Origin: Hyalangium minutum
Lineage (GTDB): Bacteria > Myxococcota > Myxococcia > Myxococcales > Myxococcaceae
Direction of reading: 5' to 3'
Assembly (NCBI RefSeq): GCF_000737315.1
Contig: NZ_JMCB01000002.1
Span: 186,001-250,000 of the forward strand
DNA length: 64,000 bases
Shown piece by piece: positions 32,889 through 52,001 of this stretch. The notes below the pieces were generated by a model. That model ran no database searches, was not told where the DNA came from, and saw only the letters and a list, made by a program, of their open reading frames with translations. A program made the position numbers and the translations under genes. The first letter of the stretch is position 1; every line of letters starts with the position of its first letter.

Positions 32889-32910
32889 GAAATGCCCTCG
32901 GACTGCTGGC

Positions 32911-33306: not shown

Positions 33307-33322
33307 GGGTGTGGAACCTCCA

Positions 33323-33355: not shown

Positions 33356-33366
33356 TGAAGCGGGAG

Positions 33367-33858
33367 CTAGCGCTGCTGGCTCCAGGAATCCTCGTGCGTC
33401 ACGCCACCGTTGGTGTACGTCCAGCTGATGGTGTGGAACACGAACGTGAGCTCCTCGAGGGCCGGATCCTTCGAGGTGGCCGGGACGATGGTGTCCGGCA
33501 CCACGTGCTTGATGGTGTTGATGCGGCCCTGCTTGAACGTCGTCGTGTAGAACTGCTCCGTCGTGCCGTCACCGGTCGGGTTCGGGCGGAAGAACTTGAA
33601 CGTCGCCTCGATGACCTGGTTCTCGCACAGCGCCTTCATCAGCAGCGGCGTGGACTTGTCGATGCGCTTACGGATGAGCAGCGGCTGGTACTGGCGCCGG
33701 CCCGTGGCGAGGCCGGAGCCGGACTCGCGCGCGGTGATGACGCCCTGCTCGTAGTAGACGCACTCGATGGAGCCTTCGCGGCCCAGGCTGACCTGGGTGC
33801 TCTCGCCCTTGATCTCCGTGCCGTTTGCCTTCAAGTAGAGATGTACTGTCTCGGCCAT
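33367..33858 (-). CDS. hcp: T6SS tube protein Hcp (TssD)
   Basis: HLYLKANGTEIKGES, GRRQYQPLLIRKRIDKSTPLL, FHTISWTY, EDSW. Confidence 0.96.
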   Translation of the reverse strand: MAETVHLYLKANGTEIKGESTQVSLGREGSIECVYYEQGVITARESGSGLATGRRQYQPLLIRKRIDKSTPLLMKALCENQVIEATFKFFRPNPTGDGTTEQFYTTTFKQGRINTIKHVVPDTIVPATSKDPALEELTFVFHTISWTYTNGGVTHEDSWSQQR

Positions 33859-33894
33859 TTCTGCCTCGTTGGGACTGCGGGGTGGGTTGCTGAA

Positions 33895-33916
33895 CCGGGC
33901 CCGTTGCCGGGCCCGG
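33895..33916 (-). other. Perfect 9-bp hairpin with GCAA (GNRA) tetraloop upstream of hcp
   Basis: Minus strand CCGGGCCCG-GCAA-CGGGCCCGG, ending 36 nt before the hcp ATG. Confidence 0.6.
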
Positions 33917-33988
33917 CGGTGATGAGGACTTCACCGGCTGCCTGGTGCGACGACAGCCAGTCCTCTCCCGCTCCAGAGGGAGCGAGGA

Positions 33989-35476: not shown

Positions 35477-35498
35477 GGGTGGTTTTCCTCGGGAGGGG

Positions 35499-36008
35499 CT
35501 ACTGCTTCGGCGCGCTCTTCTCGTCAGCCTTCATGCCGAGCTCGCGCATGAGCGTCTGGCGGCTGTCCGCGTCGTTGAGCAGGTCCTGGAGCTTGCGGCG
35601 GAACGCGGGGATGTTGCCCAGGGGGCCCTTGAGGGCGTGCAGCGCGTGGCGCAGCCGCAGCAGCTTCTCGAGCTCCGGCACCTGGTGGACGATGCTCTCC
35701 GGGTTGAAGTCGGAGATGTTGCGGAACTGCAGCGTCACCGGCAGCGTGGCGCCCTCTTCCTGGGAGAGCTTGTCCGGCACGGAGAGCGACACCTTGAGGT
35801 TCTGCTGCGCCATCACGTCGTTGAAGTTGTCCTTGTCGACGTTGATGGGAGCCCGCTCCTCGATGGGCCGCTCATCGGGCATCCCCGTGAAGTCCCCCAT
35901 CATGAGGATCTTCAGCGGCAGCTCGACTTGCTCCTGCGCGTTGCCGGTCGCAGGTTGGTAGACGATGTTGACGCGCTCAGTGGGGGCTACGGAGGTTTCC
36001 TTGCTCAT
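35499..36008 (-). CDS. tssB: T6SS sheath small subunit TssB (VipA)
   Basis: RVNIVY, VELPLKILMMGDF, DFNPESIVHQVPELEKLL, LKGPLGN. Confidence 0.97.
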   Translation of the reverse strand: MSKETSVAPTERVNIVYQPATGNAQEQVELPLKILMMGDFTGMPDERPIEERAPINVDKDNFNDVMAQQNLKVSLSVPDKLSQEEGATLPVTLQFRNISDFNPESIVHQVPELEKLLRLRHALHALKGPLGNIPAFRRKLQDLLNDADSRQTLMRELGMKADEKSAPKQ

Positions 36009-39100: not shown

Positions 39101-39842
39101 CGTAGATGGGGACCACGATGCGCAGCCGGGACGTCAGCTCGTCGATGCGCTCGCGCAGCCGCTGGCCCAGCTCGCCTGCGGCCTGGGGATCTGCGCCCAT
39201 CAGCTCGCTCACGCTCACCGTCACGACGAGCCCATTGAGGGGCCGATAGGGCCGGTGCTTGCCCAGGGTGTCCAGGAACGAGATCCACTCATCCCGGTCT
39301 TCTTCCGACTCGACATAGCGGCCCGCCGCGTCCAGGAACACCGCGTCATTGGTGAGCCACCAGTCGCAGTGACGTGTCGGGCTCACACTTCGCCCGTTCC
39401 CACCGCCCCGGTTGGAAAGGTAAGGGAACTTCAGCCCAGAGTTGCGCAGGGCGGTGCTCTTGCCCGACTCGGTGGAGCCGATGACGAGGTACCACGGCAA
39501 AACCGTGAGCGCGTCCCGCCCACCTCGAGCGAGCTTGGACGTCTTCAGCGACGAGATGGCACGGGAGAACTCGGCCTGCATGGCCTCGATCTCCGGGCGG
39601 GCCTCGGTGCGAGGAGCTGCCTTGGCTGGCTGCGGCGCTGAGGCCTCCGGAGGCTTCTGTTCAGCCTGCTCGGCTTTCTTCCTCGCGGCGCGGGCGCGCC
39701 AGCGGCGGACCATGGAGACGATCAGTGCAAAGAACAACGTCACAGCCGTAGCGGCCAGTCCCAGCCAGACAGGTTGATGGAAGTACCAGGTGCCTCCCCA
39801 GATGAGGCCCAACAGCAGTGTGATGAGGAAGAAGAACTTCAT
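36141..39842 (-). CDS. tssM: T6SS membrane complex TssM (IcmF)
   Basis: N-terminal TM helices, LPWYLVIG with Walker A-like GSTESGKST, CDWWLT, LDAAGRY, RPLNGLVV, TKCDLLTGFVEMF, RGVYFTSG, NRYPF, GEWGLFRLL. Confidence 0.96.
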   Translation of the reverse strand: MKFFFLITLLLGLIWGGTWYFHQPVWLGLAATAVTLFFALIVSMVRRWRARAARKKAEQAEQKPPEASAPQPAKAAPRTEARPEIEAMQAEFSRAISSLKTSKLARGGRDALTVLPWYLVIGSTESGKSTALRNSGLKFPYLSNRGGGNGRSVSPTRHCDWWLTNDAVFLDAAGRYVESEEDRDEWISFLDTLGKHRPYRPLNGLVVTVSVSELMGADPQAAGELGQRLRERIDELTSRLRIVVPIYVMITKCDLLTGFVEMFADLPRSERGQIWGFTVPLTAQPEAPTELLLKRFDELTAILEQRSVRRIGQERRLEARERIYQFPHSVHAIRKNLTEFIQPLFMENVFQDTPIMRGVYFTSGSQEHRVTDPRASASSSEPTLAAPRVNPEQTSESRSFFLWDVFTKVMFQDQKLAVISSMEEIRRRKRRYAVAGACLAFTVALLTLPTISFFKNRQMLRKVRDTIVAVKLETNDDISRIQELSPLQQHLADLNRHRVEGVPLWLRLGLYKGDQLFALAQSFYNSQLKWLLLGRQHDRIRQNLELFAQNQDRVDWKPSNESYGKHFDDLKMYLLITYLTDSPNPAYPRPPNEPPLDESHQAWIVKQMLRHWEDIRDRNGEVSLEQAITRHAQTYIAMLAADPLQLAFSRDERVVISARRALNRVPLATLELERIVSQANREYPGVSLGDSVGAVPFMRATKRVNGAFTRLAWEEWVRARMDSAFQGSEAWVLNRDSRENEEANRAELRTRYYQQYIQEWTDFLYSVRVEEPKDWSQTELLLESLTRGKPAPIGKLFRTLAYNVHLESPKVASGNTLSALISKALNKPAGTSATEEGPARLVDPESSIGETELTPAAVEKNFSPILAFITKTSATDDGEEKLTQLDSYQDQLNLVLTTLKEVRDKPNEAMVLIEKITSTRNTVSLLIQSQEGAHAVFEQILLPPLKQVGTVVRRDVAEKKSRKWCDEIFGPFVSLMANRYPFNKDSLLDAPLPEFTQFLHPSTGTVRKFLQTQLSEEVLPDGRRHVFAVKTAPGMGLYKDELLTYLERINNLAMTLFPGDTQEPLVRFMVRMRPGTAADSAPSEIASITLTLDGSEELYRNGPDDRWRAMTWPGPAGKLGAHIHIVSTSGNTADLDAPGEWGLFRLLERAKKIEPSTDGRFFTATWEVPDLNNAQISIDLRPERLANPFFGTSGSNTSRLLQIFRDPRLVPPAGISQAVQGCPPPIVTAKTSP

Positions 39843-39844: not shown

Positions 39845-40537
39845 CTACTGCCCCCCCTTCGCGACGGTGGCCATGTGAAGCTCGATGTCGTGGAGCATGG
39901 TGGAGGCAGTACGATCGAGGGCGAGATAGAGGCCCCCATAGAAGAGGAGTGCCACGGCGACAGCCGCGAAGGCTGCGGAGGTGAGCGAGAGCCGGCGCTT
40001 GGCCAGGGCGAGGTTCTCGGACGGGCGGTCACCGTGAGGAGCAAGCAAGTCGAAGTCGAACGGCTGGGCTCGTTCCAGGTCCTTCTGGATGCTGTCAATG
40101 AGGCTCATCAGCTCCAGCTCGCCCCCTCGGATGCGGTAGCGACCCTGAAAGCCGAACAACAGACACAGGTAATAGACCCGGAGGACCTCGGCGCGGTGGG
40201 GATCCTTGCGGATGGCATTGACGCGGTTGAAGAAGCTGTCGCCGGCGACGGTCTCGTGGAAGTAGTGGAGTTGCAGCAGGTTGCTCATCCAGAACTGCCG
40301 GTACTGCTCGGGCTTGTTGAGGACGATGTCGTCCATCAGCGCCACGAGGGCGTAGCCCATGTCCTGTGCGTCCTGATGGCTGAACCCCAGCACCGCCGCG
40401 CGCCGGAGCACTTCGTCGATGACACCGCGGAGCCGGTGGTTCAGCACTTCCGGAGGGGGAATCTCAGCGGCCTCCGCGTGGCGGAGCCGGATGATGGTGT
40501 CGAAGCAGTCCTTCGTGGCCTCGTTGACTCGATCCAT
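39845..40537 (-). CDS. tssL: T6SS TssL (DotU), without OmpA extension
   Basis: YALVALMDDIVL, LQLHYF, GDSFF, YYLCLLFGFQGRY; C-terminal TM helix and only a short tail. Confidence 0.95.
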   Translation of the reverse strand: MDRVNEATKDCFDTIIRLRHAEAAEIPPPEVLNHRLRGVIDEVLRRAAVLGFSHQDAQDMGYALVALMDDIVLNKPEQYRQFWMSNLLQLHYFHETVAGDSFFNRVNAIRKDPHRAEVLRVYYLCLLFGFQGRYRIRGGELELMSLIDSIQKDLERAQPFDFDLLAPHGDRPSENLALAKRRLSLTSAAFAAVAVALLFYGGLYLALDRTASTMLHDIELHMATVAKGGQ

Positions 40538-40570: not shown

Positions 40571-41935
40571 TCAGCGGCCCACGTTGGGCACGGCGAGCAG
40601 TTCGATGGAGGTTTGGCTGGAGTTGAAAGGGTGCGGCAGGTAGAGGGCCACGGCATGCTCGCGCAGCACGTTCCTCCAGCCAGCGTCCTGAGTGAGGGTG
40701 AAGTAGGAGGCCCCCGGGCGGATGGGCACTTCCGGTGGAGGCCGGTAGGTGACCTGCAGGGGGATGCCCTGGCTGGTGGCCTGCACCAGTCCCTGGATTT
40801 CCGACCAGCTTCCCAGCTTCGAGAGCTTGGGCAGTTGATCGACGATGGTCTGCTCCGGCAGCTCGCTCCGGACCATGATCAGGAACTGGCCGCAGCGGTC
40901 GATCCGCTCATCCTCCAGCTTGGCCCGGTAGAGCCCGTCCGCTCCCCGCTCCAGCGGTACGGTGATGCACTGCTCCAGTGCCACGGAGCGCATCAGCTCC
41001 GTCAGGCGGCGAAACAGCTCTTCGAAGGTGACGCGGAGGTTGGTGAACTGAAAGGGCGGCATGACCGAAGGGTCAGCCTCCGCCGAGAATGTGCAGAGCT
41101 GCCCTCCGAGCCGGCTCAGCATGAGGTAGAGATCATGCGGGCGCATGTTCCCGGCCTCGATCACGTGAGACAGGAACGGGATGACGCCATTAAGGGCGTG
41201 CAGTTCCAGGAAGAGCGTGACGTCCGAGGCCGTGAACTCGAGCGAGGACTCATCCCGGTGCCGCCGCCGCGTGGCGATCTGCCGCTGCTTGGAGACGATG
41301 AGCCGCAGCAACGAGCGCAGCTCGCTCATGATGTACGGAGAGGCGCCGATGCGCAGGCACGGAGGGATGTAGGTGTCGACGAGCACCAAGCTCCCTGACT
41401 TGTCGCGAGCGAGCTCGGCGATCTTCAGCGCATCGAAGTCATCCCGGGGCTCATCGCCGAACAGGAGCTTCATGTTCCGCTGCGCGAAGGAGATATGGAT
41501 GACGGAGGTAGACGCGTGCAGGTCACCCACGGGGCGGCTGCGAGGCGAGAAGCGAGGGCTTGCGCCCAGCTTGCCCGCGGCGCCGTAGCTCTCCACGTCG
41601 CTGCGCTCCTTGGGGATGCCGAGGTAGACCTCAAGCAGCTGCTGCGTCGGCCGGAAGTGCCCCTCCACGGGCCGGGCCGCGGGGGACTCCTCGTGACCAG
41701 CCTCGAAGCCAACGGAGAGCCCGTCCGGCAGGATGCCGAAGAACTCGAGGAGGCTGACCTGGCCTGCGCGCAGAGCTTCCATGTCGAACTGCATGGAGGC
41801 CACGCCCCAGGGATAGAGGCACACCGAGCTCAGGCGGGTCTCCACGAGGGACTCGTGGTAGAGGTCCAGCTGCTGCATGTGGTGGGGACTCATGAACATC
41901 CCCTCGGACCAGATGATGCGCTGCGGGGCCTTCAT
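40571..41935 (-). CDS. tssK: T6SS baseplate TssK
   Basis: IWSEGMFMSPHHMQQLD, YPWGV, GILPDG, YIPPCL; position between tssJ and tssL. Confidence 0.96.
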   Translation of the reverse strand: MKAPQRIIWSEGMFMSPHHMQQLDLYHESLVETRLSSVCLYPWGVASMQFDMEALRAGQVSLLEFFGILPDGLSVGFEAGHEESPAARPVEGHFRPTQQLLEVYLGIPKERSDVESYGAAGKLGASPRFSPRSRPVGDLHASTSVIHISFAQRNMKLLFGDEPRDDFDALKIAELARDKSGSLVLVDTYIPPCLRIGASPYIMSELRSLLRLIVSKQRQIATRRRHRDESSLEFTASDVTLFLELHALNGVIPFLSHVIEAGNMRPHDLYLMLSRLGGQLCTFSAEADPSVMPPFQFTNLRVTFEELFRRLTELMRSVALEQCITVPLERGADGLYRAKLEDERIDRCGQFLIMVRSELPEQTIVDQLPKLSKLGSWSEIQGLVQATSQGIPLQVTYRPPPEVPIRPGASYFTLTQDAGWRNVLREHAVALYLPHPFNSSQTSIELLAVPNVGR

Positions 41936-42519
41936 GGCGTTCTCCTCGAAGGCCGCAGGTAGTCGATCTGGTAGCCCTGAAGCTTGAAGCGGAGCTGGGT
42001 GTCCAGCGGGGTCGCGTCATCGCCGCGGTCACCTGCTGGCTGCTCCTCGCATTGGCTGGGAGGCACGGGCGGCAGCTTGGCGACGGCCAGCCACGCGTAG
42101 CCGAGCGGCTGGCGGAAGAGGCCCACCGCTGCCACGTACTGCGCCTTGGGATCCCGCTGTACCCAGTGCTTCACCACATCGCCGGCCGGGACAACGAACT
42201 CGGCTGTCTGCAGCAGATCCTCTCCCAGCAAGCTCTTGGGGTCGGACCAGAGCTTTTGAAAGCTTGCACGCTCCAACTTGACGCTGTCCTTGATCTGGAG
42301 GAACTGGACCACCGTTGGGAGCGCCCGGCCATAGGCGTCTGGGTTGACGCGCTCCGCCGCCTCGAGCTTGGCAAGGAAAGGAGGAGGTGTATCGCAGGCG
42401 GAGGCCTTGCTCAGAGCGCAGCCAGGGAGGGTTAGTAGCGCGCAGACGGCCGTCGTCCTCTTGAGGGAATACCTCTGGAGAGGAACTCGCCGTGCGTGAT
42501 CACAGCCATGGTTCGACAT
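41932..42519 (-). CDS. tssJ: T6SS outer-membrane lipoprotein TssJ
   Basis: Lipobox LPGC, NPDAYGRALPTVVQFLQIKD, QYVAAVGLFRQP; its stop overlaps the tssK ATG. Start uncertain. Confidence 0.88.
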   Translation of the reverse strand: MSNHGCDHARRVPLQRYSLKRTTAVCALLTLPGCALSKASACDTPPPFLAKLEAAERVNPDAYGRALPTVVQFLQIKDSVKLERASFQKLWSDPKSLLGEDLLQTAEFVVPAGDVVKHWVQRDPKAQYVAAVGLFRQPLGYAWLAVAKLPPVPPSQCEEQPAGDRGDDATPLDTQLRFKLQGYQIDYLRPSRRTP

Positions 42520-42769
42520 GCCACCACTCGTCAGGTGAAATGGAGAGAGCCCAGCAGTGGGCGGTATGGGCCCTTGGGAAAAGTTCCCCGACCAACTCAA
42601 CGCGGGGAGGGATAGCCCAATCGCTCACACTTGTGAGTACCACCTAAGTGGTAACCCCATTCACAGGGGCATCAGGTACCACTGCCAAGAAGCAGGATTC
42701 GAGCATCCCCTATCCGATCACGTGGCTGGTAACACCTTATCCAGCCGTGATCTTGCTGCGAGGAGTTGC
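42520..42769. promoter_or_regulatory. Divergent promoter region between the T6SS operon and the OmpA/adhesin/kinase operon, with adjacent palindromes
   Basis: CTCACA-ct-TGTGAG (42624-42637) abuts TACCAC-ctaa-GTGGTA (42638-42653). TACCAC recurs at 42677; TGGTAAC at 42649 and 42727; AGGAG at 42761 before ATG 42770. Confidence 0.5.
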
Positions 42770-44563
42770 ATGCAACAGAGCAGGCTTGCCCGGACAGTGT
42801 ACGGGATCGCGATCATCCTGGCTTCATCGATGGCGTTCGCTCAGGAGCCGGAGCGGCTGGTCGGCTTTGAACTGGAGCGGCTGGATGTCAATCCTGCCGC
42901 CACAGGCTCGCTGGTGCAGGGGACAGGGGAGCTGATGCCGACCGGAGACTACCGTTTCTCCGCGATCAGCCATTACCAGCACAACCCGCTGATGTTCTCG
43001 CGTAGGGGGCAGGTGCTGCCCATCGTGGGGAGCCGTACCACTCTGCTCTTGGCGGCGGCATACGCACCGTTCTCATGGCTTGAGATGGGTGTGCAGCTCC
43101 CGCTGGTAGCGTTCCAGACGGGGGCTGATCTGAAGGAAGAGGGGATCGATCGGCTCTCCTCCTTCGGGCTCGGCACCCCTCTGGTGAGCGCAAGGATGAG
43201 GCTGTTCTCCCAACTGGATGGCGCCCTGGGCGATCTGGCGCTGGAGATGGGCGTGGGGGCACCGGTCGGCGGTTCTCACGGGCTGACTCGGGATGCGGGG
43301 CCGCGCTATGCGCCGCGGCTCATGATCGGCCGGCGGTTCGGCTGGTTCAGGGTGGCGCTGGACTCGAGGATGGTGGTGCGTCCGGAGATTAAACCCTACG
43401 CGGATCGGGAGTTTGTCCGTGGTCCCATGGGGAACGAGGCTCAGGTGGGGCTCGTGCTGGCGACGGTGGGCCAGCGTATGCGCTGGGAGTTGGACGTACG
43501 GGGCACGGTTCCGCTCGTGGAGCAGCCCAGCTCTGTGGAGCTCTTGCTGGGGCCTCGATACCTGGTCAATCCAGCGGTGGAGGTGTTTGCACTGGCCGGT
43601 GTAGGAGGGGGTTCGGCGCCCGGTATCCCTCTGTTCCGAGTGATGCTGGGAGCGGCGTTCGGCAAGGTCATCCCGCCCCGCTTGTCAGATGAATCGGCGG
43701 TGAACTGCTCTCCGGCACTGGACCACACCGTGGAGGAGTGCCCGGACCTGGATGAGGACGAGGACGGCGTTCCCAACGGGGTGGACCAGTGTGATGACGA
43801 GGCGGGGCCCGCGGATCGTTTGGGCTGCCCTCGGAAGGACAGCGACAACGATGGCATTGAGGACAAGCTCGACGCGTGCCCAGAAGTACTAGGAGTGGCG
43901 GCTTGGCAGGGCTGTCCGATGCCGGACCAGGACAAGGATGGGATTGAGGACGAGAGAGACGTGTGTCCATCCGAGCCCGGGCCCGAGAAATCGCGCGGGT
44001 GTCCGCTCAAAGACCGGGACCAAGATGGCGTCGAGGACGATGTGGACCAGTGCCCGGATCTGGCGGGGCCTGAGGAACGTCAGGGCTGCCCAGAGTCGGA
44101 TCTGGACAAGGACAACATCGCCAACGTGTTGGACACCTGCGCGAAGGAGGCAGGCCCTGAGAGCAACCAAGGGTGCCCCGCGCATGAAGTGCCGCGGGTG
44201 AAGCTGACGCGGAAACAGATCGAACTGACGGAGAAGATCCTCTTCATCCCAGGGCAGCCACGAATCCGGCCCGAGTCTTTCGAGGTTCTCCGTTGGGTCT
44301 CGAAGGTGATCCTCGAGCACCCAGACCTGCCGATGATCGTGGTCGGCGCGCACACGGACGACCGGGGGAACGCGCTCGACAACCTGCGGCTGACGCAGGG
44401 CCGGGCGGACGCTGTCAGAGAGTTCCTTATCGAGCGTGGGGTCGCACCCGAGCGGCTCCAAGCCAAGGGCTACGGACAGGAGCGGCCCGTTGCCAGTAAT
44501 GCCACGTCCATCGGACGTGAGAACAACCGACGCATCGAATTCACCATCGTTATCTCGCAGTAG
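42770..44563 (+). CDS. Outer-membrane beta-barrel + thrombospondin type-3 repeats + OmpA domain protein (TraB-like architecture)
   Basis: Signal peptide, amphipathic beta-strand N-terminal region, five C-P-x-x-D-x-D-x-D-G-type repeats, OmpA motifs GAHTDDRG, NLRLTQGRADAV, GYGQERP, NRRIEF. Confidence 0.9.
   Translation: MQQSRLARTVYGIAIILASSMAFAQEPERLVGFELERLDVNPAATGSLVQGTGELMPTGDYRFSAISHYQHNPLMFSRRGQVLPIVGSRTTLLLAAAYAPFSWLEMGVQLPLVAFQTGADLKEEGIDRLSSFGLGTPLVSARMRLFSQLDGALGDLALEMGVGAPVGGSHGLTRDAGPRYAPRLMIGRRFGWFRVALDSRMVVRPEIKPYADREFVRGPMGNEAQVGLVLATVGQRMRWELDVRGTVPLVEQPSSVELLLGPRYLVNPAVEVFALAGVGGGSAPGIPLFRVMLGAAFGKVIPPRLSDESAVNCSPALDHTVEECPDLDEDEDGVPNGVDQCDDEAGPADRLGCPRKDSDNDGIEDKLDACPEVLGVAAWQGCPMPDQDKDGIEDERDVCPSEPGPEKSRGCPLKDRDQDGVEDDVDQCPDLAGPEERQGCPESDLDKDNIANVLDTCAKEAGPESNQGCPAHEVPRVKLTRKQIELTEKILFIPGQPRIRPESFEVLRWVSKVILEHPDLPMIVVGAHTDDRGNALDNLRLTQGRADAVREFLIERGVAPERLQAKGYGQERPVASNATSIGRENNRRIEFTIVISQ
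43739..44180 (+). repeat. Five intragenic TSP3 (Ca-binding DxDxDG) repeats
   Basis: DLDEDEDGV, KDSDNDGI, PDQDKDGI, KDRDQDGV, SDLDKDNI, each followed by DxC. Confidence 0.85.
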
Positions 44564-44594
44564 GTGGAGCTGACAGAGTTACAGGGGGAACCCC

Positions 44595-47500
44595 ATGAGA
44601 AGATCATGCAGCCTGATGTCGCTGGTGGCCCTGGTGTTCTGGGCCTCCACGTCCGCGGCCGAGCCCGACACATTGGGCCTGGGAACCGGACGTGATGGAG
44701 CGCTGATCGTCACGGAGCCGCGAACCGTCATCAATCGCTATGCACAGGTCACGGTACCTCTTGCGACGGGAGACACCGTGCTGTTCGTCTCATCGACAGA
44801 AGGGTTCGCGGCGGGCGACCTGATCATGGTGTTGCAGACGACGGGCATTGTCCCGGAGCCGGCTCAAGGCGCGCCTGGGCCCATCTCGTTGAGCACGGAT
44901 CCTGTGGGCAGGTGGGAACTGGCGCGGGTGAGCTTCGCCGAACGTCAGGAGCTGAAGTTGGGAGCCCCGCTCCTGTACTCCTACGCGGGACTTGTGACCC
45001 AGGTGATCCGCATCCCAGAGTACACGGATGTGAAGGTTGTAGCAGGGGCGAGCCTCGTCGCGGCGCCGTGGGATGGCAGCCAAGGAGGGGTTCTTGCCTT
45101 CCTGGCCAAGGGGCTCATTCAGAACGAGGGGACGCTTCAAGCCAGCGGCGTAGGATTCCGCGGAGGACTGGTGCTTGAGGAGTTCGCTGGCTTCGCCGGG
45201 TGCGCCGCCTTGCCTGCCTCCGTGCGCCCGGGAGCCGGCAGGGGAGAAGGGATCTCGTCCCTGGACTTCGGTGTGTGGGCCACTGGCCTGGAGAATGCGT
45301 CCAACGGCGGTGGTGGTGGTCTCTGCCCCCGAGCGGGAGGGGGGGGAGGGGGGAATGGTGCGGCAGGAGGTCGGGGAGGCGACTCCCTGGTCTATGGCGA
45401 CTCGGCACGGAATATCGGGGGCAAGGGTGGAGCGGGGCTGGTCTATTCCCTGACGGATCACCTGACGCTGGGAGGAGGCGGTGGCCAGGGGTATGGGGGA
45501 GGGAGGCATTCCCAGGGAGGCGCTGGAGGCGGAGCCATCTTCGTGCGCGGGTATCGCCTGGCTGGGAGCGGATCCATTCTGGCGGATGGTGCCGCTGGTG
45601 ATGATGCAACGCAGGGAGGCGCGGGCGGAGGTGGGGCTGGCGGGAGCGTCTACTTGAGGTTCGTGGACTCTGCGGAGTGTGGTTTCATCTCTGCGAGCGG
45701 CGGCAATGGAGGGAGCAGCTCCGCAGGGATTGCGGAGGATGGAGGCGCTGGAGGCGGAGGCGGAGGCGGACGGCTGCTATATCAAGCGGCGAGCACGGGG
45801 GCTTGTCCCATGTCCGTTGAAGCGGGGCTCGCAGGCGGAGTGGCCGGGACAATTTCTGGAATTGTCACGAATGCACAGCCTGCCGCGAGCCAGCTTGTCG
45901 CGCATCGAGGCATCATCACCCGGCTTGAGACGGAATTCGAGCAGTTCGCGAACTGTACTCTCAACGCGCCTGTGTTCACGACGCCGGTGAACAACGGGTA
46001 TGTTAATGCCCAACTCAAGGTGACAGGGTCTGTGTCAGGGTATGGAAGTAACGCCAAGGTCAGGATTTATGTCGGAAGCGACTTGGCAGGGGATGCCACC
46101 CCTAATAGCGGAACGTGGAGCTATACTTTTGCAGTGGGCGTGCTGGAGGACGCTCGTCAGTATACCATCAAAGCTATAGGGGTTTGTGGTAGCAATTCAG
46201 AGGAGAGTTCTAATGCGACGAGCATCAACGTCACGGTTGACACGGCGGTACCGCAGATTGGATGGGTAACGCGGCCGAGCGATCCTTCTCCTGAGCTCAG
46301 GCCTACCCTCTCTTTCAACACGGGAAACCAGGAAGTTTCCGTGAGGTACACGTGTACGCTGGATGGGAGCGCAGGGTTTGGCTGTGGTGTGGGAACCACT
46401 GGACAAGTGGTTTCATATACAGTCGCAGGCACTTTGCTCGATGGTAGCCGTCACACATTCACTGTTAGGGGAACGGATGAAGCGGATAATCCAACCAACG
46501 GCTCCCTCTCCTACTCTTGGACGGTGATATATCCATCAGATACGGTCATCGATCCTCCTCGCCCACCAGATCCTACCAATGTGACGGCTGCGGCCTTCTC
46601 ATTCCATGCGACAAAGGCGGGCGCTACCTTGGAGTGCAGACTCGATGAGAGCGCATGGGCGGCCTGCACCAGCCCCAAGTCGTACTCCGCTCTGGCGGAC
46701 GGCCGCCACACCTTTGAAGTCAAGGCGATGTTGGGGTCGATCGAAGACACCTCGCCCGCCTCCTATTCTTGGGTGGTGGATACGGAATCTCCGGATACCC
46801 GCATTGAGCAGAAGCCCAATGATCCCACGAACAGTACGAGGGCTACGTTCACGTTCAGTTCGCCGGAAGAGGGGTGCAGTTTCGAGTGCAGCCTGAACGG
46901 TGGAGTCTACACATCTTGTCCAAGTCCATGGACCTCTCCAGAACTGGCGGACAGCCGTCACACGCTTTCGGTCAGGGCCAGGGACGCGGCAGGCAATATC
47001 GATCCCTCGCCTGCCACGTATTCCTGGCTCGTTGACTCGACGCCTCCGAATACCGTGTTTGACCAGAAGCCTACCAATCCCAGCAACGTCACGCGGCCCA
47101 CGTTCGCGTTCAGTGCCTCGGAGACGGGAAGCAGCTTCGTGTGTAGCTTGGATTCGGCGGCGTTTACGCCGTGTACGAGTCCAGTGACGACACCTCTTCT
47201 CGCTGAGGGTAGCCACACCTTCGCGGTGAAGGCCACGGATGCGCTAGGTAATACGGCTGCCTCGGCCACGACCTATACCTGGGTGGTGGACATCACCCCC
47301 CCTGACACAATCCTGGGAGATAAACCCACCAATCCTTCCAACGAACCGAGGCCTAGGTTCACGTTTAGCGCCACCGAGACGGGGAGTACCTTCGAGTGCC
47401 GGATGGATCAGGGACTGTACGTAACCTGTTCCAGCCCATGGACCGCTCCATCCCTCACGGATGGAAGCCATACCTTTGAAGTGAGGGCCACGGATGCCGC

Positions 47501-50192
47501 AGGAAATGTAGACCCTACTCCTGTCAGCTACACCTGGGATGTGGACACAGAGGCGCCGGACACTGCAATCGAGCAGAAGCCCTCCAATCCCAGCAACAGC
47601 GCGCGAGCCACGTTCACCTTCAGTGGGCAGGGAGGCGCCGTAGGCTTCGAGTGCAGCTTGGACTCTGCGCAGTTCGCGCCCTGCACAAGTCCCTGGCAGT
47701 CCCCGCTTCTGGCAGAGGGGAATCACACGTTCGCGGTCAGGGCCAAGGATGCCGCAGGCAACATCGATCCTTCACCTGCCACCTATACCTGGCGAGTGGA
47801 TACGCAGCCACCAGACACATCGATTGATCAAAAGCCTCCTAACCCCGATAACAGGACGAGCGCTACGTTCACCTTTGCGTCCAGTGAGGCTGGGAGCAGC
47901 TTCGAATGCAGCCTCGACGATGGGGAGTACGCGAGCTGCACCAGCCCCTTGACCTACTCGGTTCCAGAGGGAAGCCACATCTTTGCGGTGAGGGCCAAGG
48001 ATGCTGCGGGCAATGTGGACGACTCTCCTGCGACTTATACCTGGCGGGTGGACACTGGCGCTCCAGACACGGCGATCGATCAGAAGCCGCCCAATCCCAG
48101 CAACAATGCGAATCCAACCTTCACGTTCACCTCCACGGAGCCCGGCAGCAGCTTCGAGTGCAGCCTGGACTCAGGGCCGTTCGCAGCATGCGCCAGCCCA
48201 GTGGTCTTCCACGTTTCCGAGGGAAGCCACTCGCTCTCTGTGAGGGCCAAGGATGGGGCGGGCAACGTTGACCCTTCTCCTGCCACCTACCCGTGGGTGG
48301 TGGATCTCACTCCGCCAGACACGGCGATTGAGGCGCCGAGACCGCGCAACCCTACCAATGAGACCAGTGCCACCTTTCGCTTTTCGGGTGCTGGAGCGGA
48401 AGGGAAGTACTATTGCAAACTCGATGAGCAGGTGTACGCAGACTGCTCATCGGGCACTATCACCTACGATGCGCTGAGCCAGCGGGTGCACACTTTCTCT
48501 GTGTATGCCAAGGATGCTGCAGGCAATGATGATCTGCAGAACCCAGCCACTTACATCTGGGAGGTCGATACAGAGCCCCCTGAGACAGTGATCGAGGAGG
48601 CAAGCAAGCCGCCCAATCCCACCAGTCTGCTCAGCGCCACGTTCCGCTTCTCGGGAGCTGGACCTGGCGGACACTACCAGTGCTCGCTCGACTCGCAGTC
48701 GTACGTCGGCTGTGACTCGGGAACCATCACCTTCTCGCCGTTGAGCAATGGTGAGCATTATTTCAAGGTCTTTGCGATTGATGCCGCAGGGAATGCAGAT
48801 GCGAGCCCCGCAGAGTACCGGTGGGTGGTGGACTCGAGCCCGCCTGAGACCGTCATTCTGGAAGTCACGGAGGCGGGTGGCATTGCTGCGAGGAACCCCA
48901 CCAACTCAAGGAGTATGAAGTTCCGCTTCTCGGGAGCGGATGCACCCGGAGGATATCGGTGCCGCCTCGAGTCTCCCACCTCTCCAGGAAACTTCAGCCC
49001 CTGCGGTACAAGATTGGGTACCGGCACTGGGACTGCTGGCATCGAGGAGTATGTGAACTTGGGTGCCGGCCGCCATGTCTTCTCTGTCTATGCAGTCGAT
49101 GCCGCAGGCAATGAGGACCCGAGTGCTGCTACCTATGAGTGGGTGGTGGATCTTCAGCCTCCCGTCACCACCATCACGAATCCAGCGACCAACGCTGCGA
49201 AGCTCTGGCGTACCAATCAGACATCACCTGTCTTCAGGGGTACCTCCGAAATGGGGAGCAGGGTGGTGCTGCAGATCGACGGACTGGGCACGGATACTCA
49301 ACAAATGGGGAGCAGCGGGAATTGGGAACTGACTACCCGACATGTCTTGGCAGAGGGTAAGCACGTCGTGCGTGTGGTCGAAGCGACCGATGCGGTCGGC
49401 AATACGTGGACTCCGTCGAGCACTTCGCCACTGCCTAGCGACTCGGCATTCGAGTTCTGGGTGGATACGACTCCGCCGCAGACCGCGATTACTCAGAAAC
49501 CTCCCGAGATTCACAATTCCATCAGTGTTCTTTTCAATTTCAGTGACCCAACCGAGGAGGACGGGTTGAGTACAACGTTTGAGTGCAAGGTCGTCGCTCA
49601 GCACCTTGAGAAAGAGTTTGAGAGCCCTTGCCTTGGCGAGCAGCCTTACAACCTCGCGAACATCTTCGAGATCGCGAACGACAACATCAAAGCTGTGAAT
49701 GGGACGTATACCATCTTCGTAGCCGCGAGAGATGAAGCGGGAAATCTGGACGAGACTCCTGCTTCCTATGCGTTCACTGTCATTGTTGAGCCGCCTGATG
49801 CTCCTCAGATCAAGAAGCCAGCCAATGGCGATGAAATCTACGACCTGAACCCCAGTGTCTCGGGGAACACCATCCCGAATGGAAGCGTGGAGTTTTTCCT
49901 GGATGGCAAGAGCATGGGGTCCAAGAAGGCGGATGCGGCAGGAGTGTTCACGTTCCGGTTCGCTGACCCCTTGGAAGAGAGAGCCCACGAGCTGCGAGCC
50001 TCGGTAACGGATCTGGCCAGCAATCCAAGCCCTCAATCGCAGCCGATTACCTTCACAGTGTTCGCGCCCAAACCCGTGGCTGAGGCAATTGGGGGTGGAT
50101 TGGGCTGTGCCGCCTCCACCGCGGAGCCGTGGCTCGTGCTCCTGGGACTCTTCGCGGGAGGAGTCTTGCGCTCACGCCACCGCCGGCGCTGA
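44595..50192 (+). CDS. AgmC-like large surface protein: N-terminal AgmC-type/Gly-rich domain, about 15 Ig-like repeats, C-terminal MYXO-CTERM-like anchor
   Basis: Signal peptide, then AEPDTLGLGTGRDG, which I recall as typical of AgmC-family N-termini. Gly-rich GGGGG runs, tandem Ig-like units, and tail GGGLGCAAST-(TM)-RSRHRRR. Confidence 0.85.
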   Translation: MRRSCSLMSLVALVFWASTSAAEPDTLGLGTGRDGALIVTEPRTVINRYAQVTVPLATGDTVLFVSSTEGFAAGDLIMVLQTTGIVPEPAQGAPGPISLSTDPVGRWELARVSFAERQELKLGAPLLYSYAGLVTQVIRIPEYTDVKVVAGASLVAAPWDGSQGGVLAFLAKGLIQNEGTLQASGVGFRGGLVLEEFAGFAGCAALPASVRPGAGRGEGISSLDFGVWATGLENASNGGGGGLCPRAGGGGGGNGAAGGRGGDSLVYGDSARNIGGKGGAGLVYSLTDHLTLGGGGGQGYGGGRHSQGGAGGGAIFVRGYRLAGSGSILADGAAGDDATQGGAGGGGAGGSVYLRFVDSAECGFISASGGNGGSSSAGIAEDGGAGGGGGGGRLLYQAASTGACPMSVEAGLAGGVAGTISGIVTNAQPAASQLVAHRGIITRLETEFEQFANCTLNAPVFTTPVNNGYVNAQLKVTGSVSGYGSNAKVRIYVGSDLAGDATPNSGTWSYTFAVGVLEDARQYTIKAIGVCGSNSEESSNATSINVTVDTAVPQIGWVTRPSDPSPELRPTLSFNTGNQEVSVRYTCTLDGSAGFGCGVGTTGQVVSYTVAGTLLDGSRHTFTVRGTDEADNPTNGSLSYSWTVIYPSDTVIDPPRPPDPTNVTAAAFSFHATKAGATLECRLDESAWAACTSPKSYSALADGRHTFEVKAMLGSIEDTSPASYSWVVDTESPDTRIEQKPNDPTNSTRATFTFSSPEEGCSFECSLNGGVYTSCPSPWTSPELADSRHTLSVRARDAAGNIDPSPATYSWLVDSTPPNTVFDQKPTNPSNVTRPTFAFSASETGSSFVCSLDSAAFTPCTSPVTTPLLAEGSHTFAVKATDALGNTAASATTYTWVVDITPPDTILGDKPTNPSNEPRPRFTFSATETGSTFECRMDQGLYVTCSSPWTAPSLTDGSHTFEVRATDAAGNVDPTPVSYTWDVDTEAPDTAIEQKPSNPSNSARATFTFSGQGGAVGFECSLDSAQFAPCTSPWQSPLLAEGNHTFAVRAKDAAGNIDPSPATYTWRVDTQPPDTSIDQKPPNPDNRTSATFTFASSEAGSSFECSLDDGEYASCTSPLTYSVPEGSHIFAVRAKDAAGNVDDSPATYTWRVDTGAPDTAIDQKPPNPSNNANPTFTFTSTEPGSSFECSLDSGPFAACASPVVFHVSEGSHSLSVRAKDGAGNVDPSPATYPWVVDLTPPDTAIEAPRPRNPTNETSATFRFSGAGAEGKYYCKLDEQVYADCSSGTITYDALSQRVHTFSVYAKDAAGNDDLQNPATYIWEVDTEPPETVIEEASKPPNPTSLLSATFRFSGAGPGGHYQCSLDSQSYVGCDSGTITFSPLSNGEHYFKVFAIDAAGNADASPAEYRWVVDSSPPETVILEVTEAGGIAARNPTNSRSMKFRFSGADAPGGYRCRLESPTSPGNFSPCGTRLGTGTGTAGIEEYVNLGAGRHVFSVYAVDAAGNEDPSAATYEWVVDLQPPVTTITNPATNAAKLWRTNQTSPVFRGTSEMGSRVVLQIDGLGTDTQQMGSSGNWELTTRHVLAEGKHVVRVVEATDAVGNTWTPSSTSPLPSDSAFEFWVDTTPPQTAITQKPPEIHNSISVLFNFSDPTEEDGLSTTFECKVVAQHLEKEFESPCLGEQPYNLANIFEIANDNIKAVNGTYTIFVAARDEAGNLDETPASYAFTVIVEPPDAPQIKKPANGDEIYDLNPSVSGNTIPNGSVEFFLDGKSMGSKKADAAGVFTFRFADPLEERAHELRASVTDLASNPSPQSQPITFTVFAPKPVAEAIGGGLGCAASTAEPWLVLLGLFAGGVLRSRHRRR
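46236..50070 (+). repeat. Tandem array of about 84-88-aa Ig-like repeats inside the adhesin
   Basis: Consensus VDTxPPDTxIxQKPxNPxN...FTF...FECSLD...CxSP...EGxHTFxVRAxDAAGNxDxSPATYxW. The DNA motif GCCAAGGATG recurs about every 250-260 bp (near 47742, 47994, 48246, 48507). Confidence 0.9.
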
Positions 50193-50213
50193 GCCAGGCG
50201 GAGACACACGGTC

Positions 50214-52001
50214 ATGCATAGTGAGAAGTATCAGCTGATCCAAAAACTCGCGACCGGCGGCATGGCCGAGGTGTTCCTCGCCAAGTCCGCCGGTCCCATG
50301 GGCTTCGAGAAGTCGCTCGTGGTCAAGCGCATCCTGCCGCACCTGGCCACCGAATCCTCCTTCGTGGACATGTTTTTGTCCGAAGCCCGGCTCGCCGCTC
50401 AGCTCAATCACCCGAACATCGTCCAGATCTTCGATTTCGGCGAGGCGGACGGCACCTACTTCATCGCGATGGAGTACATCGATGGGGTCAACCTGAGAGA
50501 GGTCATCCGGCGCGCTGGCGCAGTGGGCCTCGTTCTACCCCTCGCGTTTTGCGCCCGCGTCATCTCCGCCGCCTGCGAAGGGCTCGCCTTTGCCCACGAC
50601 TGCATCGACCCGGCCACGAACCTGCCGATGAACATCATTCACCGCGACATCAGCCCAGACAACATTCTGCTGTCGCGCCAAGGCTCGGTGAAGGTCGTGG
50701 ACTTCGGCATCGCCAAGGCCGCGGGTGTGAGCCCCCACACCCAGACGGGCGTCCTCAAAGGCAAGCTGGCGTACATGCCGCCTGAGCAGCTGCGCAATGA
50801 GCCCTTGGATCGCCGCGCGGATGTCTACGCGTTGGGCATTGTCCTCTACGAGCTGCTCACAGGGTTCAAGCCCTTCAGGGCTTCCTCCGAGGCCGCTCTG
50901 CTCCAGGCCATCCTCTCCGAGCCTGAGGTCCCCGTCGAACAGCGCCGGTCTGATGTGCCAGAAACCCTCCAACGCATCCTCTCTCGGGCCATCTCCAAGG
51001 ATCGCGAGAAGCGCTACCCTGACTGCCCCTCCTTTCAGGCGGATCTGGAGGCGTTCATCGTCGAGTTCATTGTCTCGACCGGTAAACCCATGGGCGCCTC
51101 GCAGATGGCAGGCATCGTCGCCATGATGGCGACCGCCGAGAGTGTATCCCCTTCGCCTCAGAAGACGACGAGTCTCCCCCGGTCTCCTTCCAAGCTCATT
51201 CAGTCCCAGCCGCAGCCCGAGTCTTCCTCGGCCGCTGCAGTGAGGCCTGTCACCGATCTTGCTCCGCTGCAAGAGGTCCTGCAGCCCGAGGTGCACGGGC
51301 CCAGGGATGAGCGGACTACGGTGGCTCGTCCCTCGAGGCTTTCTCCCAAGGTTCCCCATCCGCACGACAAGGAGACGGCCTGGGTCGCGCTCGTGGGCGT
51401 CCTGTTGATCCTGATAGGGGGCGGGTACCTGAGCCGACGGCTTCTCGCGGGGGGCCCACCTCGGGAACCGGTCTCTCTTGCTCCCGCTGGGCCTACCGTT
51501 TCTGTGTCCGTCATGGCTCCGGGAGAGGCTCACGGAGGTGAGGCCCTTCCTGCGACGACTCCGCAAGCGTCAGATGGGGGGACATCTTCGCCAGCGCTGA
51601 AAGACGTCCTGTCCAGCAGCGGCACGGATGAGCACAGCCAATCGATTGCGTCCGCAGGAATGGACGTCTCCCAACCGCCAGGTCCGGTTTTGCGGGATGC
51701 AGGAGTTGCTGCGTCTGGTAGAGGTTCTTCCTCACGGGGGGAGGTCAAGCCTCCTGAGAAGCCTCGCACTCAGGCTGTTGTCGTGGGACAGGGCTCCCTG
51801 GATCTGCTGGTCGTTCCCGAGGCCATGCTGTTCCTCAATGGATGGCAGATGGGGCTGACCCGGAAGGCTTCCTTCCCGCTCGACGCGGGCAAGTACACCT
51901 TGAAGCTCGTCAACTCAAAGCTTCAAAAGAAAGTAGAGCGGGAGATTCTGGTCACCGCAGGCCAGACCACCCAGATCGACATCAATTTGTTGGAACAGTA
52001 A
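50214..52001 (+). CDS. Hanks-type Ser/Thr protein kinase with one TM helix and C-terminal PEGA-like domain
   Basis: LATGGMAEV, VVKRIL, HRDISPDNI, DFGIAK, GKLAYMPPE, DVYALG; TM WVALVGVLLILIGGGYL; PEGA-like GSLDLLVVPEAMLFLNG...GKYTLKL. Confidence 0.95.
   Translation: MHSEKYQLIQKLATGGMAEVFLAKSAGPMGFEKSLVVKRILPHLATESSFVDMFLSEARLAAQLNHPNIVQIFDFGEADGTYFIAMEYIDGVNLREVIRRAGAVGLVLPLAFCARVISAACEGLAFAHDCIDPATNLPMNIIHRDISPDNILLSRQGSVKVVDFGIAKAAGVSPHTQTGVLKGKLAYMPPEQLRNEPLDRRADVYALGIVLYELLTGFKPFRASSEAALLQAILSEPEVPVEQRRSDVPETLQRILSRAISKDREKRYPDCPSFQADLEAFIVEFIVSTGKPMGASQMAGIVAMMATAESVSPSPQKTTSLPRSPSKLIQSQPQPESSSAAAVRPVTDLAPLQEVLQPEVHGPRDERTTVARPSRLSPKVPHPHDKETAWVALVGVLLILIGGGYLSRRLLAGGPPREPVSLAPAGPTVSVSVMAPGEAHGGEALPATTPQASDGGTSSPALKDVLSSSGTDEHSQSIASAGMDVSQPPGPVLRDAGVAASGRGSSSRGEVKPPEKPRTQAVVVGQGSLDLLVVPEAMLFLNGWQMGLTRKASFPLDAGKYTLKLVNSKLQKKVEREILVTAGQTTQIDINLLEQ

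What the first reader, a model, noticed from the sequence alone, without database searches (positions are those of the whole stretch)
42770..52001. TraAB-like porin/adhesin pair plus membrane kinase, head-to-head with a T6SS: candidate contact-recognition-and-kill system
Seen: an operon (31- and 21-bp gaps) of a beta-barrel/TSP3/OmpA protein, a giant Ig-repeat protein with a MYXO-CTERM-like tail, and a TM Ser/Thr kinase with an outward PEGA-like domain, sharing a 250-bp promoter gap with tssJ. Known: myxobacterial TraA (MYXO-CTERM surface receptor) and TraB (barrel/TSP3/OmpA) form a cell-cell adhesin for kin recognition, and the Hanks kinase PpkA triggers T6SS firing in Pseudomonas. Inference: a parallel module in which a long adhesin, held by a TraB-like partner, captures or recognises target cells and signals through the kinase to aim or activate the T6SS. 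I know no description of this coupling.
Basis: partly seen in the sequence, partly recalled or inferred. Interest (0 to 1): 0.8.

Follow-up and report, generated by a model that had tools for sequence, protein, structure and literature searches.

The report
AgmC adhesin pair beside T6SS
The genes are real. They are the counterpart of the Myxococcus xanthus agmC/MXAN_4799 surface-adhesin pair, which sits next to the type VI secretion genes in several myxobacterial genera, but the kinase is a genus-level add-on and nothing shows that it controls firing.

Summary
Three co-oriented genes (gaps 31 and 21 bp) lie head-to-head with tssJ across 250 bp.

- **Gene 1:** a TraB-family protein with a predicted 12-strand barrel, TSP3 repeats and an OmpA domain.
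- **Gene 2:** not TraA-like. It is an AgmC-family adhesin (NCBIfam AgmC_N, 438 bits against a cutoff of 275), with about 11 Ig-like repeats and a sub-threshold MYXO-CTERM tail.
- **Gene 3:** an intact membrane Ser/Thr kinase with a weak PEGA-like ectodomain.

M. xanthus agmC is MXAN_4798, which lies beside the T6SS cluster. A 2026 paper already draws MXAN_4798/4799 as T6SS "accessory genes".

The barrel gene lies at the tssJ end of the T6SS cluster in 11 distinct loci, counting the window. These cover four named genera and five gene arrangements. Paralogous barrel+AgmC pairs occur without T6SS, and fused adhesin-barrel proteins exist.

The kinase is found only in the Hyalangium clade. The window has no Fha or PppA partner.

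Verdict: a cell-wall-anchored adhesin module, plausibly a T6SS accessory. The adhesin-to-kinase-to-firing circuit is unsupported.

The parts
42520..42769 (.). Divergent intergenic region between tssJ and the barrel gene. It holds a perfect palindrome, TACCAC-N4-GTGGTA, at 42638-42653.
   Evidence: The palindrome is unique in the 64-kb window (0.02 expected). It is exact in L001 and L011 and has 1-2 mismatches in L004 and L008. No sigma-70-like promoter was scored.
42770..44563 (+). TraB-family outer-membrane protein, positional orthologue of MXAN_4799. Signal peptide, predicted 12-strand beta-barrel (residues 61-298, nt 42950-43663), TSP3 calcium-binding repeats (about 300-475) and an OmpA peptidoglycan-binding domain (477-594).
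   Evidence: Pfam TSP_3 and OmpA. NCBIfam TraB model at 271.5 bits against a 700 cutoff. AlphaFold2 pLDDT 84. Foldseek: the barrel resembles FapF and COG4313 channels (target-normalised TM 0.62-0.67), and the TSP3+OmpA part resembles Capnocytophaga OmpA 5wtl at 40% identity.
44595..50192 (+). AgmC-family giant surface adhesin. Signal peptide, conserved Gly-rich head (residues 10-414, nt 44622-45836), about 11 Ig-like repeats of roughly 85 aa (about residues 640-1700, nt 46512-49694), and a MYXO-CTERM-like tail (residues 1833-1865, nt 50091-50189).
   Evidence: NF047640 gliding_AgmC_N at 438 bits against a 275 cutoff. Big_13 and related repeats. Repeat register. Tail at 13.3 bits against 20. 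Homologue tails share G-C...RRRR. Head model pLDDT 80, with weak tailspike-like matches.
50214..52001 (+). Receptor-type Ser/Thr kinase. Kinase domain (residues 6-268, nt 50229-51017), transmembrane helix (388-406, nt 51375-51431), low-complexity linker and a PEGA-like domain (536-592, nt 51819-51989).
   Evidence: Pkinase E 5.8e-40. By eye on the translation, the HRD, DFG and catalytic-lysine motifs are present. Hydropathy. PEGA below cutoff, although the 68%-identical orthologue P0249 carries a precomputed PF08308 hit.
41932..42519 (-). tssJ (T6SS outer-membrane lipoprotein)
   Evidence: T6SS-SciN E 3e-21 and TIGR03352. Lipobox LTLPGC.
40571..41935 (-). tssK
   Evidence: T6SS_VasE E 2.8e-100.
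39845..40537 (-). tssL, short form: 230 aa, C-terminal transmembrane helix, no peptidoglycan-binding extension.
   Evidence: DotU only. Sequence.
36141..39842 (-). tssM
   Evidence: IcmF-related domains.
30139..36008 (-). tssB (35499-36008), tssC (33989-35476), hcp (33367-33858), tssE (32911-33306), tssF (31146-32888), tssG (30139-31182)
   Evidence: Pfam hits.
20726..28249 (-). vgrG (26081-28249), TPR protein (24754-26160) and Rhs-core effector (20726-24793), in a low-GC stretch.
   Evidence: NCBIfam VgrG and RHS hits. TPR_12. GC 0.54-0.61.

Best explanation
Genes 1 and 2 are the Hyalangium-lineage counterparts of M. xanthus MXAN_4799 and agmC (MXAN_4798).

What the parts are (shown by family models, structure prediction and synteny):
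- Gene 1 is a TraB-family outer-membrane barrel whose OmpA domain would bind peptidoglycan.
- Gene 2 is a secreted giant adhesin. A conserved Gly-rich head sits on a stalk of about a dozen Ig-like domains. A MYXO-CTERM-type tail would tie it to the outer membrane.

How the pair most likely works (inferred by analogy with TraAB and from fusion proteins): the barrel docks the adhesin and couples it to the cell wall, so that pulling forces on the adhesin are borne by the sacculus.

Relation to the T6SS (inferred from the conserved neighbourhood only): this particular orthologous pair travels with tssJKLM. I think it acts as a lineage-specific T6SS accessory that holds a neighbouring cell or surface close to the machine, anchors the membrane complex to peptidoglycan, or both. 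The TssL here has no peptidoglycan-binding domain of its own.

The kinase is a PEGA-type receptor kinase that joined the operon within the Hyalangium clade. Its target is unknown, and a role in T6SS firing is speculation.
For: - Family identity: AgmC_N is above its cutoff. The TraB model matches at E 8e-81.
- Structure: the gene 1 model has barrel, TSP3 and OmpA regions, the architecture described for TraB (PMC12045341).
- The pair is the stable unit. A gene with the AgmC head follows the barrel gene in all 6 readable metagenome loci, and also in L001, L002, L004-L008 and L020.
- Fusion proteins link the two families. P0013 and P0097 carry an AgmC head and a barrel/TSP3/OmpA region in one chain, P0013 with an internal MYXO-CTERM motif. 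This is the same idea published for MXAN_5598 (PMC11980579).
- T6SS linkage: 11 distinct loci counting the window, in Hyalangium, Myxococcus (two species), Stigmatella, Melittangium and unnamed lineages. They show five different local arrangements and unrelated outer flanks.
- Tree: T6SS-linked members occur in all four subclades of the main barrel-gene clade.
- Literature: agmC = MXAN_4798. MXAN_4798/4799 are drawn as T6SS accessory genes.
- TssL is 230 aa with no OmpA extension.
- A conserved palindrome lies in the shared promoter region.
Against: - The T6SS link rests on gene neighbourhood only. I have no expression, interaction or phenotype data.
- The loci were sampled through homologues of the adhesin or the barrel, not at random, and several come from one clade. 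Inherited synteny cannot be fully excluded.
- One main-clade pair (A. violaceum, L005) and all four group-2 pairs (L002, L007, L016, L017) lie away from any T6SS.
- The only genetic phenotype on record for agmC is a gliding (A-motility) defect (PMC3169522, Table S1).
- The 2026 review of T6SS accessory factors does not mention Myxococcus or this family.
- H. versicolor keeps the barrel gene next to tssJ but has lost the adhesin. Stigmatella sp. ncwal1 has only an Ig-repeat protein without the head.
Confidence: 0.6

Rival explanations
1. The adhesin captures or recognises a target cell, the signal passes to the co-transcribed kinase, and the kinase phosphorylates a Tss or Fha-like protein to aim or trigger T6SS firing, as PpkA does.
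For: - The kinase is intact, spans the membrane and has an outward domain.
- It lies 21 bp after the adhesin gene.
- Orthologues (53-89% identical) stay beside the barrel gene and the T6SS in the Hyalangium clade, even where the adhesin is lost (L011, 22-bp gap).
- PpkA is known to phosphorylate Fha, and TssL in Agrobacterium (PMC13584744).
Against: - The kinase is absent from the syntenic loci L004 and L008, and from the Myxococcus, Stigmatella and Melittangium loci.
- No Fha/TagH, PP2C phosphatase or TagF was found in the window.
- The ectodomain is PEGA-like, not vWA.
- The kinase belongs to a very large paralogous family (6628 hits at E<=1e-30). From my own knowledge, myxobacteria carry about a hundred such kinases per genome, so chance adjacency is common.
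- The adhesin head is conserved rather than polymorphic.
Confidence: 0.1
2. The pair is simply a gliding or substrate adhesin, matching the A-motility phenotype of agmC. It has no functional tie to the T6SS, and the adjacency is a frozen accident inherited from the common ancestor of the Cystobacterineae.
For: - agmC was found in a screen for A-motility mutants (PMC3169522, Table S1).
- Paralogous pairs occur far from any T6SS.
- The AgmC head domain also occurs in Bacteroidota proteins that carry T9SS sorting tags, in another gliding phylum.
- T6SS work in M. xanthus uses deletions of MXAN_4800-4813, which leave out 4798/4799.
Against: The adjacency survived at least four local rearrangements: a vgrG insertion, inversion of the adhesin, a switch to co-directional order, and loss of the adhesin. 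The outer flanks are unrelated between genera. A conserved operator-like palindrome sits in the shared promoter region.
Confidence: 0.25
3. Only the barrel/OmpA protein matters to the T6SS. It is the peptidoglycan anchor of the membrane complex, the role played elsewhere by TagL or TagI or by the long form of TssL. The adhesin is a passenger that uses the same anchor.
For: - TssL here is the short form.
- The barrel gene, not the adhesin, is the constant neighbour of the tssJ end of the cluster. H. versicolor lacks the adhesin and Stigmatella sp. ncwal1 lacks the head domain.
- Peptidoglycan-binding accessory proteins are a recognised T6SS class (PMC8253398; PMC13584744).
Against: - The same barrel family pairs with AgmC-type adhesins and with TraA where no T6SS is present. 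Fusion proteins tie the barrel to the adhesin rather than to any Tss protein.
- The known anchors are inner-membrane or lipoprotein forms, not outer-membrane barrels.
Confidence: 0.15

Closest known systems
M. xanthus AgmC (MXAN_4798) with MXAN_4799, next to the T6SS cluster MXAN_4800-4813
   Same: Same head family (NF047640 above cutoff), Ig-like stalk and MYXO-CTERM-type tail. The same TraB-like partner gene lies just upstream, and the position beside the tssJ end of the T6SS is the same.
   Different: In Myxococcus, vgrG lies between tssJ and the pair, the two ORFs overlap by 4 bp, and no kinase follows. Head identity to the window is only about 42%. That MXAN_4799 is the barrel protein is inferred from two other Myxococcus genomes, not read from DK1622 itself.
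TraA/TraB outer-membrane-exchange adhesin of M. xanthus
   Same: Gene 1 is homologous to TraB (E 8e-81) and shares the barrel-TSP3-OmpA architecture. The partner is a stalked surface protein with a MYXO-CTERM-type tail, encoded in the same operon.
   Different: Gene 1 scores 271 bits against the TraB cutoff of 700. Gene 2 has no PA14 domain or Cys-rich repeats. Gene order is reversed (anchor first). The distal head is the conserved part, not the variable one.
MXAN_5598-type fused adhesin-barrel-OmpA proteins
   Same: Same two modules. P0013 and P0097 carry an AgmC head and a barrel/TSP3/OmpA region, P0013 with an internal MYXO-CTERM motif (PMC11980579).
   Different: One polypeptide, with the adhesin first. 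MXAN_5598 is reported next to ftsA/ftsZ, not next to a T6SS.
TasL of Vibrio fischeri T6SS2 (a target-recognition accessory factor)
   Same: A large surface protein encoded within a T6SS cluster, with Ig/FN3-like domains outside the cell, that improves cell-cell contact for killing (PMC9040878; PMC13584744). This is the role I propose as possible here.
   Different: TasL is described as a single lipoprotein with no barrel/OmpA partner. I did not test sequence similarity to it. The function of the pair here is untested.
PpkA (TagE)-Fha-PppA threonine phosphorylation pathway
   Same: A membrane Hanks-type kinase encoded beside a T6SS.
   Different: No Fha, PppA or TagQRST in the window. The ectodomain is PEGA-like rather than vWA. 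The kinase is confined to one genus-level clade.
Peptidoglycan-binding T6SS accessories (TagL, TagI, long-form TssL)
   Same: An OmpA/Pal/MotB domain protein encoded in a T6SS cluster whose TssL lacks that domain.
   Different: An outer-membrane barrel with TSP3 repeats rather than an inner-membrane protein or lipoprotein. The same family also works with adhesins where there is no T6SS.

Membership tests
AgmC family (NCBIfam NF047640) | N-terminal AgmC domain scoring above the curated cutoff | tested here: met
   438.4 bits against 275, residues 10-414 on model positions 8-412 of 412.
AgmC family (NCBIfam NF047640) | Long stalk of Ig-like repeats after the head | tested here: met
   Big_13 E 1.5e-58 and related families. 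About 11 repeats of roughly 85 aa.
AgmC family (NCBIfam NF047640) | MYXO-CTERM sorting tail | tested here: inconclusive
   TIGR03901 aligns end to end (positions 1-34 of 34) but scores 13.3 bits against 20. The Gly-Cys, hydrophobic helix and Arg cluster are visible and shared by homologues.
AgmC family (NCBIfam NF047640) | Genomic position of the genetic agmC (MXAN_4798): after a TraB-like gene, beside the T6SS | tested here: met
   Same layout in Myxococcus sp. SDU36 and M. qinghaiensis. agmC = MXAN_4798. MXAN_4798/4799 are drawn with the T6SS cluster.
AgmC family (NCBIfam NF047640) | Loss gives an A-motility defect | not testable with these tools
   This needs genetics.
TraB (NCBIfam NF033763) | Score at or above the curated TraB cutoff | tested here: not met
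   271.5 bits against 700. It is a paralogue, not TraB.
TraB (NCBIfam NF033763) | Beta-barrel, TSP3 linker and OmpA domain | tested here: met
   TraB architecture as described in PMC12045341.
TraA | PA14-like variable domain and Cys-rich repeats (TIGR04201) | tested here: not met
   Neither appears among the Pfam or NCBIfam hits at E<=0.01.
TraA | The distal domain is the polymorphic part | tested here: not met
   The head is 72-90% identical to the nearest relative, against 37-50% just after it. This is a between-species comparison only.
PpkA/TagE threonine phosphorylation pathway | Hanks-type kinase with one transmembrane helix | tested here: met
PpkA/TagE threonine phosphorylation pathway | Fha/TagH substrate and PppA phosphatase in the same cluster | tested here: not met
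   No FHA or PP2C hit in any ORF scanned across the window. Small ORFs were not scanned exhaustively.
PpkA/TagE threonine phosphorylation pathway | The kinase travels with the T6SS across taxa | tested here: not met
   Orthologues occur only in the Hyalangium clade. They are absent from L004, L006, L008, L009, L010 and L020.
Peptidoglycan-binding T6SS accessory (TagL-like role) | PF00691 domain protein encoded in a T6SS cluster whose TssL lacks that domain | tested here: met
   and the loci listed in the full report.
Peptidoglycan-binding T6SS accessory (TagL-like role) | Binds TssL, M or J and is needed for Hcp export | not testable with these tools
   This needs interaction and secretion assays.
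T6SS target-recognition factor (TasL-like role) | Surface protein from the T6SS cluster that raises killing when contact is limiting | not testable with these tools
   Only the location and the predicted surface display are met.

The most novel reading that the evidence does not exclude
The AgmC/MXAN_4799-type pair may be a true accessory module of the myxobacterial T6SS that is not yet catalogued. It would be a cell-wall-anchored long adhesin that docks neighbouring cells, or fixes the machine, at firing sites. This would tie an old gliding-motility gene (agmC) to contact-dependent killing. In Hyalangium, a receptor kinase would have been recruited to the operon to sense or tune this.
Probability: 0.3. 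Interest if true: 0.7.

Novelty: new variant of a known kind. Interest (0 to 1): 0.5.

Why it matters
[quoted passage not shown] A 2026 review of T6SS accessory factors lists nothing from myxobacteria (PMC13584744).

The comparative picture here names a concrete candidate: a conserved adhesin and cell-wall-anchor pair at the tssJ end of the cluster. That candidate can be tested at once in the genetically tractable M. xanthus (MXAN_4798/4799). It would also give a second reading of the old agmC motility phenotype.

If the link is only inherited synteny, the locus is an ordinary member of a large family of TraAB-like adhesin pairs.

Tried and rejected
- **Literature:** full-text searches for agmC found nothing relevant. 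The gene-to-locus link came from a supplementary table instead. The supplement of the myxosortase paper held no entry for MXAN_4798 or MXAN_5598.
- **Look-ups:** two context look-ups were not on record.
- **DNA repeats:** Tandem Repeats Finder found none in the adhesin gene, so the protein repeats are old.
- **Promoters and terminators:** the scan gave nothing above the shuffled background.
- **Trees:** a first tree run timed out. A second mixed in kinase sequences by mistake. The clean tree is.
- **Head structure:** the Foldseek matches of the adhesin head to phage tailspike depolymerases have good E-values (2e-5) but TM-scores of 0.19 or less. I treat them only as a hint of a beta-helix or glycan-binding head, not as a finding.
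- **TraA-like kin recognition:** considered and rejected, because the head is the conserved part.

Full report
**Observation**

They are separated by 31 and 21 bp, and each is preceded by a purine-rich ribosome-binding motif.

The opposite strand carries a T6SS cluster: tssJ, K, L, M, B, C, hcp, tssE, F, G, then vgrG, a TPR gene and an Rhs effector. TssJ most likely starts at the ATG at 42519, just before a lipobox. That leaves a 250-bp divergent gap. The description is confirmed.

**What the proteins are**

Gene 1 has Pfam TSP_3 and OmpA domains. It matches the NCBIfam TraB model at E 8e-81. At 271 bits it is far below the 700-bit cutoff, so it is a TraB paralogue.
- An AlphaFold2 model built on 26 homologues (pLDDT 84) shows 12 long strands at residues 61-298, a TSP3 linker and an OmpA domain.
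- In Foldseek the barrel matches the 12-strand channels FapF and COG4313. The TSP3+OmpA part matches Capnocytophaga OmpA at 40% identity.
- This is the architecture published for TraB (PMC12045341).

Gene 2 is not TraA-like. It has no PA14 domain and no Cys-rich repeats.
- Its first 414 residues match NCBIfam NF047640, "gliding_AgmC_N", at 438 bits against a cutoff of 275.
- About 11 Ig-like repeats of roughly 85 aa follow.
- The tail aligns to the whole MYXO-CTERM model but below threshold. About a hundred homologues in Cystobacterineae share the head, the stalk and the G-C...RRRR tail.
- The head model (pLDDT 80) gives only weak tailspike-like matches.

Gene 3 is an intact Hanks-type kinase with one transmembrane helix and a sub-threshold PEGA-like outer domain.

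**Comparative genomics**

I read the gene context of 20 related loci.

The barrel gene lies at the tssJ end of the T6SS cluster in 11 distinct loci, counting the window. The other ten are:
- L001 (L012 is a near-identical copy), L004, L008, L013 and L018, all from metagenomes.
- L011, Hyalangium versicolor.
- L006, Myxococcus sp. SDU36.
- L020, M. qinghaiensis.
- L009, Stigmatella sp. ncwal1.
- L010, Melittangium boletus.

Five arrangements occur:

| Arrangement | Where |
|---|---|
| tssJ head-to-head with barrel then AgmC (L004 has an extra Ig-repeat gene between them) | window, L001, L004, L008, L013 |
| vgrG inserted between tssJ and the pair | both Myxococcus loci |
| barrel and an Ig-repeat protein upstream of tssJKLM, same direction | Stigmatella |
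| AgmC inverted | Melittangium |
| AgmC lost, kinase directly after the barrel gene | H. versicolor |

L018 is too short to show what follows the barrel gene. The outer flanks share no genes between genera.

In a neighbour-joining tree of the barrel proteins, T6SS-linked members fall in all four subclades of the main clade. One main-clade pair (A. violaceum, L005) lies elsewhere. So do four pairs of a second, more distant clade (L002, L007, L016, L017).

An AgmC-head gene follows the barrel gene in nearly every readable locus. Two proteins, P0013 and P0097, fuse an AgmC head with a barrel/TSP3/OmpA region. P0013 also has an internal MYXO-CTERM motif.

So the stable unit is the barrel+adhesin pair, and one orthologous lineage of it travels with the T6SS.

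**Literature**

- Table S1 of Luciano et al. 2011 (PMC3169522) lists agmC, from the 2003 transposon screen for A-motility mutants, as MXAN_4798, 1731 aa.
- The M. xanthus T6SS cluster is usually given as MXAN_4800-4813, with vgrG = MXAN_4800 (PMC6627406).
[quoted passage not shown] It also says M. xanthus has no known mechanism for T6SS target specificity (PMC13310138).
- The myxosortase paper points out that MXAN_5598 fuses an adhesin, a MYXO-CTERM motif, a barrel and an OmpA domain "similar to TraA and TraB" (PMC11980579).
- A 2026 review of T6SS accessory factors has classes for target-recognition factors (TasL, TslA), peptidoglycan anchors (TagL, TagI) and the PpkA pathway. It does not mention Myxococcus or this family (PMC13584744).

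**Mechanism**

Shown: the family assignments, the predicted folds, the operon layout, the fusions and the conserved neighbourhood.

Inferred:
- The barrel docks the lipid-anchored adhesin and ties it to peptidoglycan, as proposed for TraAB.
- The T6SS-linked pair serves the machine, by holding a neighbour or surface near the firing site, by anchoring the membrane complex, or both. The TssL here is the short form without a peptidoglycan-binding domain.
- The head is the most conserved part of the adhesin: 72-90% identity to the closest relative, against 37-50% in the next 300 residues. This points to a conserved ligand rather than allele-specific kin recognition.
- A perfect palindrome, TACCAC-N4-GTGGTA, is unique in the window and conserved in the clade. 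It sits in the divergent promoter region and could be a shared operator.

**The kinase**

- Full-length orthologues (53-89% identical) occur only in Hyalangium species and related assembled metagenome genomes. In L001 and L011 they lie directly in the operon.
- The otherwise syntenic loci L004 and L008 lack it. They carry an unrelated kinase 12 kb away.
- Myxococcus, Stigmatella and Melittangium have none at the locus.
- The window holds no FHA or PP2C protein.
- The kinase belongs to a very large family of PEGA-type kinases.

Its retention next to the barrel gene in H. versicolor, even after the adhesin was lost, is the only point in favour of a functional tie. I rate the adhesin-to-kinase-to-firing circuit at about 0.1.

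**Verdict**

The finding is real and well described. The giant protein is a named family (AgmC), and the pair's place beside the T6SS is already visible in M. xanthus and has been noted in print. What is new here:
- The breadth of the linkage across genera and gene arrangements.
- The evidence that the barrel gene is the constant partner.
- The genus-specific kinase.

Whether the pair works for the T6SS remains untested. It is directly testable in M. xanthus.

Noticed in passing
window 42638-42653: A perfect palindrome, TACCAC-CTAA-GTGGTA, lies in the tssJ/barrel intergenic region. It occurs once in 64 kb (0.02 expected). It is exact in L001 and L011 and near-exact in L004 and L008, but was not found in the Myxococcus, Stigmatella or Melittangium loci. 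It looks like a clade-specific operator.
   Followed up: partly
window 20000-28300: A low-GC stretch (0.54-0.61 against 0.65-0.70 around it) holds vgrG, a TPR protein, an Rhs-core effector (1355 aa) and a 286-aa ORF with no family hit. That ORF is a possible immunity gene.
   Followed up: partly
window 28312-30700: No ClpV/TssH, TagF or recognisable TssA was found in the window. A 547-aa ORF (29057-30700) overlaps tssG and has no family hit. A gene for a NAD(P)-binding protein (28312-29040) sits inside the T6SS cluster.
   Followed up: partly
window 46000-50000: GC drops to 0.58 across the Ig-repeat stalk of the adhesin gene. The repeats are too diverged for a DNA-level tandem-repeat call.
   Followed up: partly
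L011 8179-11803 (Hyalangium versicolor): The adhesin gene is missing. The kinase follows the barrel gene after 22 bp, still head-to-head with tssJ.
   Followed up: yes
L004 6733-9945; L005 14569-18799: L004 has an extra 1070-aa Ig-repeat gene without the AgmC head, between the barrel gene and AgmC, and a transposase further downstream. L005 has short Big_13 fragments around a transposase downstream of its AgmC. These look like repeat genes being shuffled or decaying.
   Followed up: no
proteins P0098, P0101-P0120: The AgmC head domain also occurs in Bacteroidota proteins that end in T9SS sorting domains (PF13585, PF18962), sometimes in the middle of the protein. The same head is therefore displayed through different surface-anchoring systems in two gliding phyla.
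   Followed up: partly
proteins P0013 (3113 aa) and P0097 (2555 aa); L003 10001-16786: Single polypeptides combine an AgmC head and Ig stalk with a barrel/TSP3/OmpA region. P0013 has an internal MYXO-CTERM motif near residue 2454.
   Followed up: yes
L004 21173-22744; L008 21542-23122: A different Ser/Thr kinase, only 23-24% identical to the window's, lies between the TPR gene and the 310-aa gene in these syntenic loci. The window has no gene at that spot.
   Followed up: partly
window 52311-61764: The genes downstream of the trio are conserved in the closest relatives: an SPW-repeat membrane protein, an FRG-domain protein, a 788-aa TPR protein, a 310-aa protein with no family hit, and a 1190-aa VIT/DUF2135 protein.
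   Followed up: no
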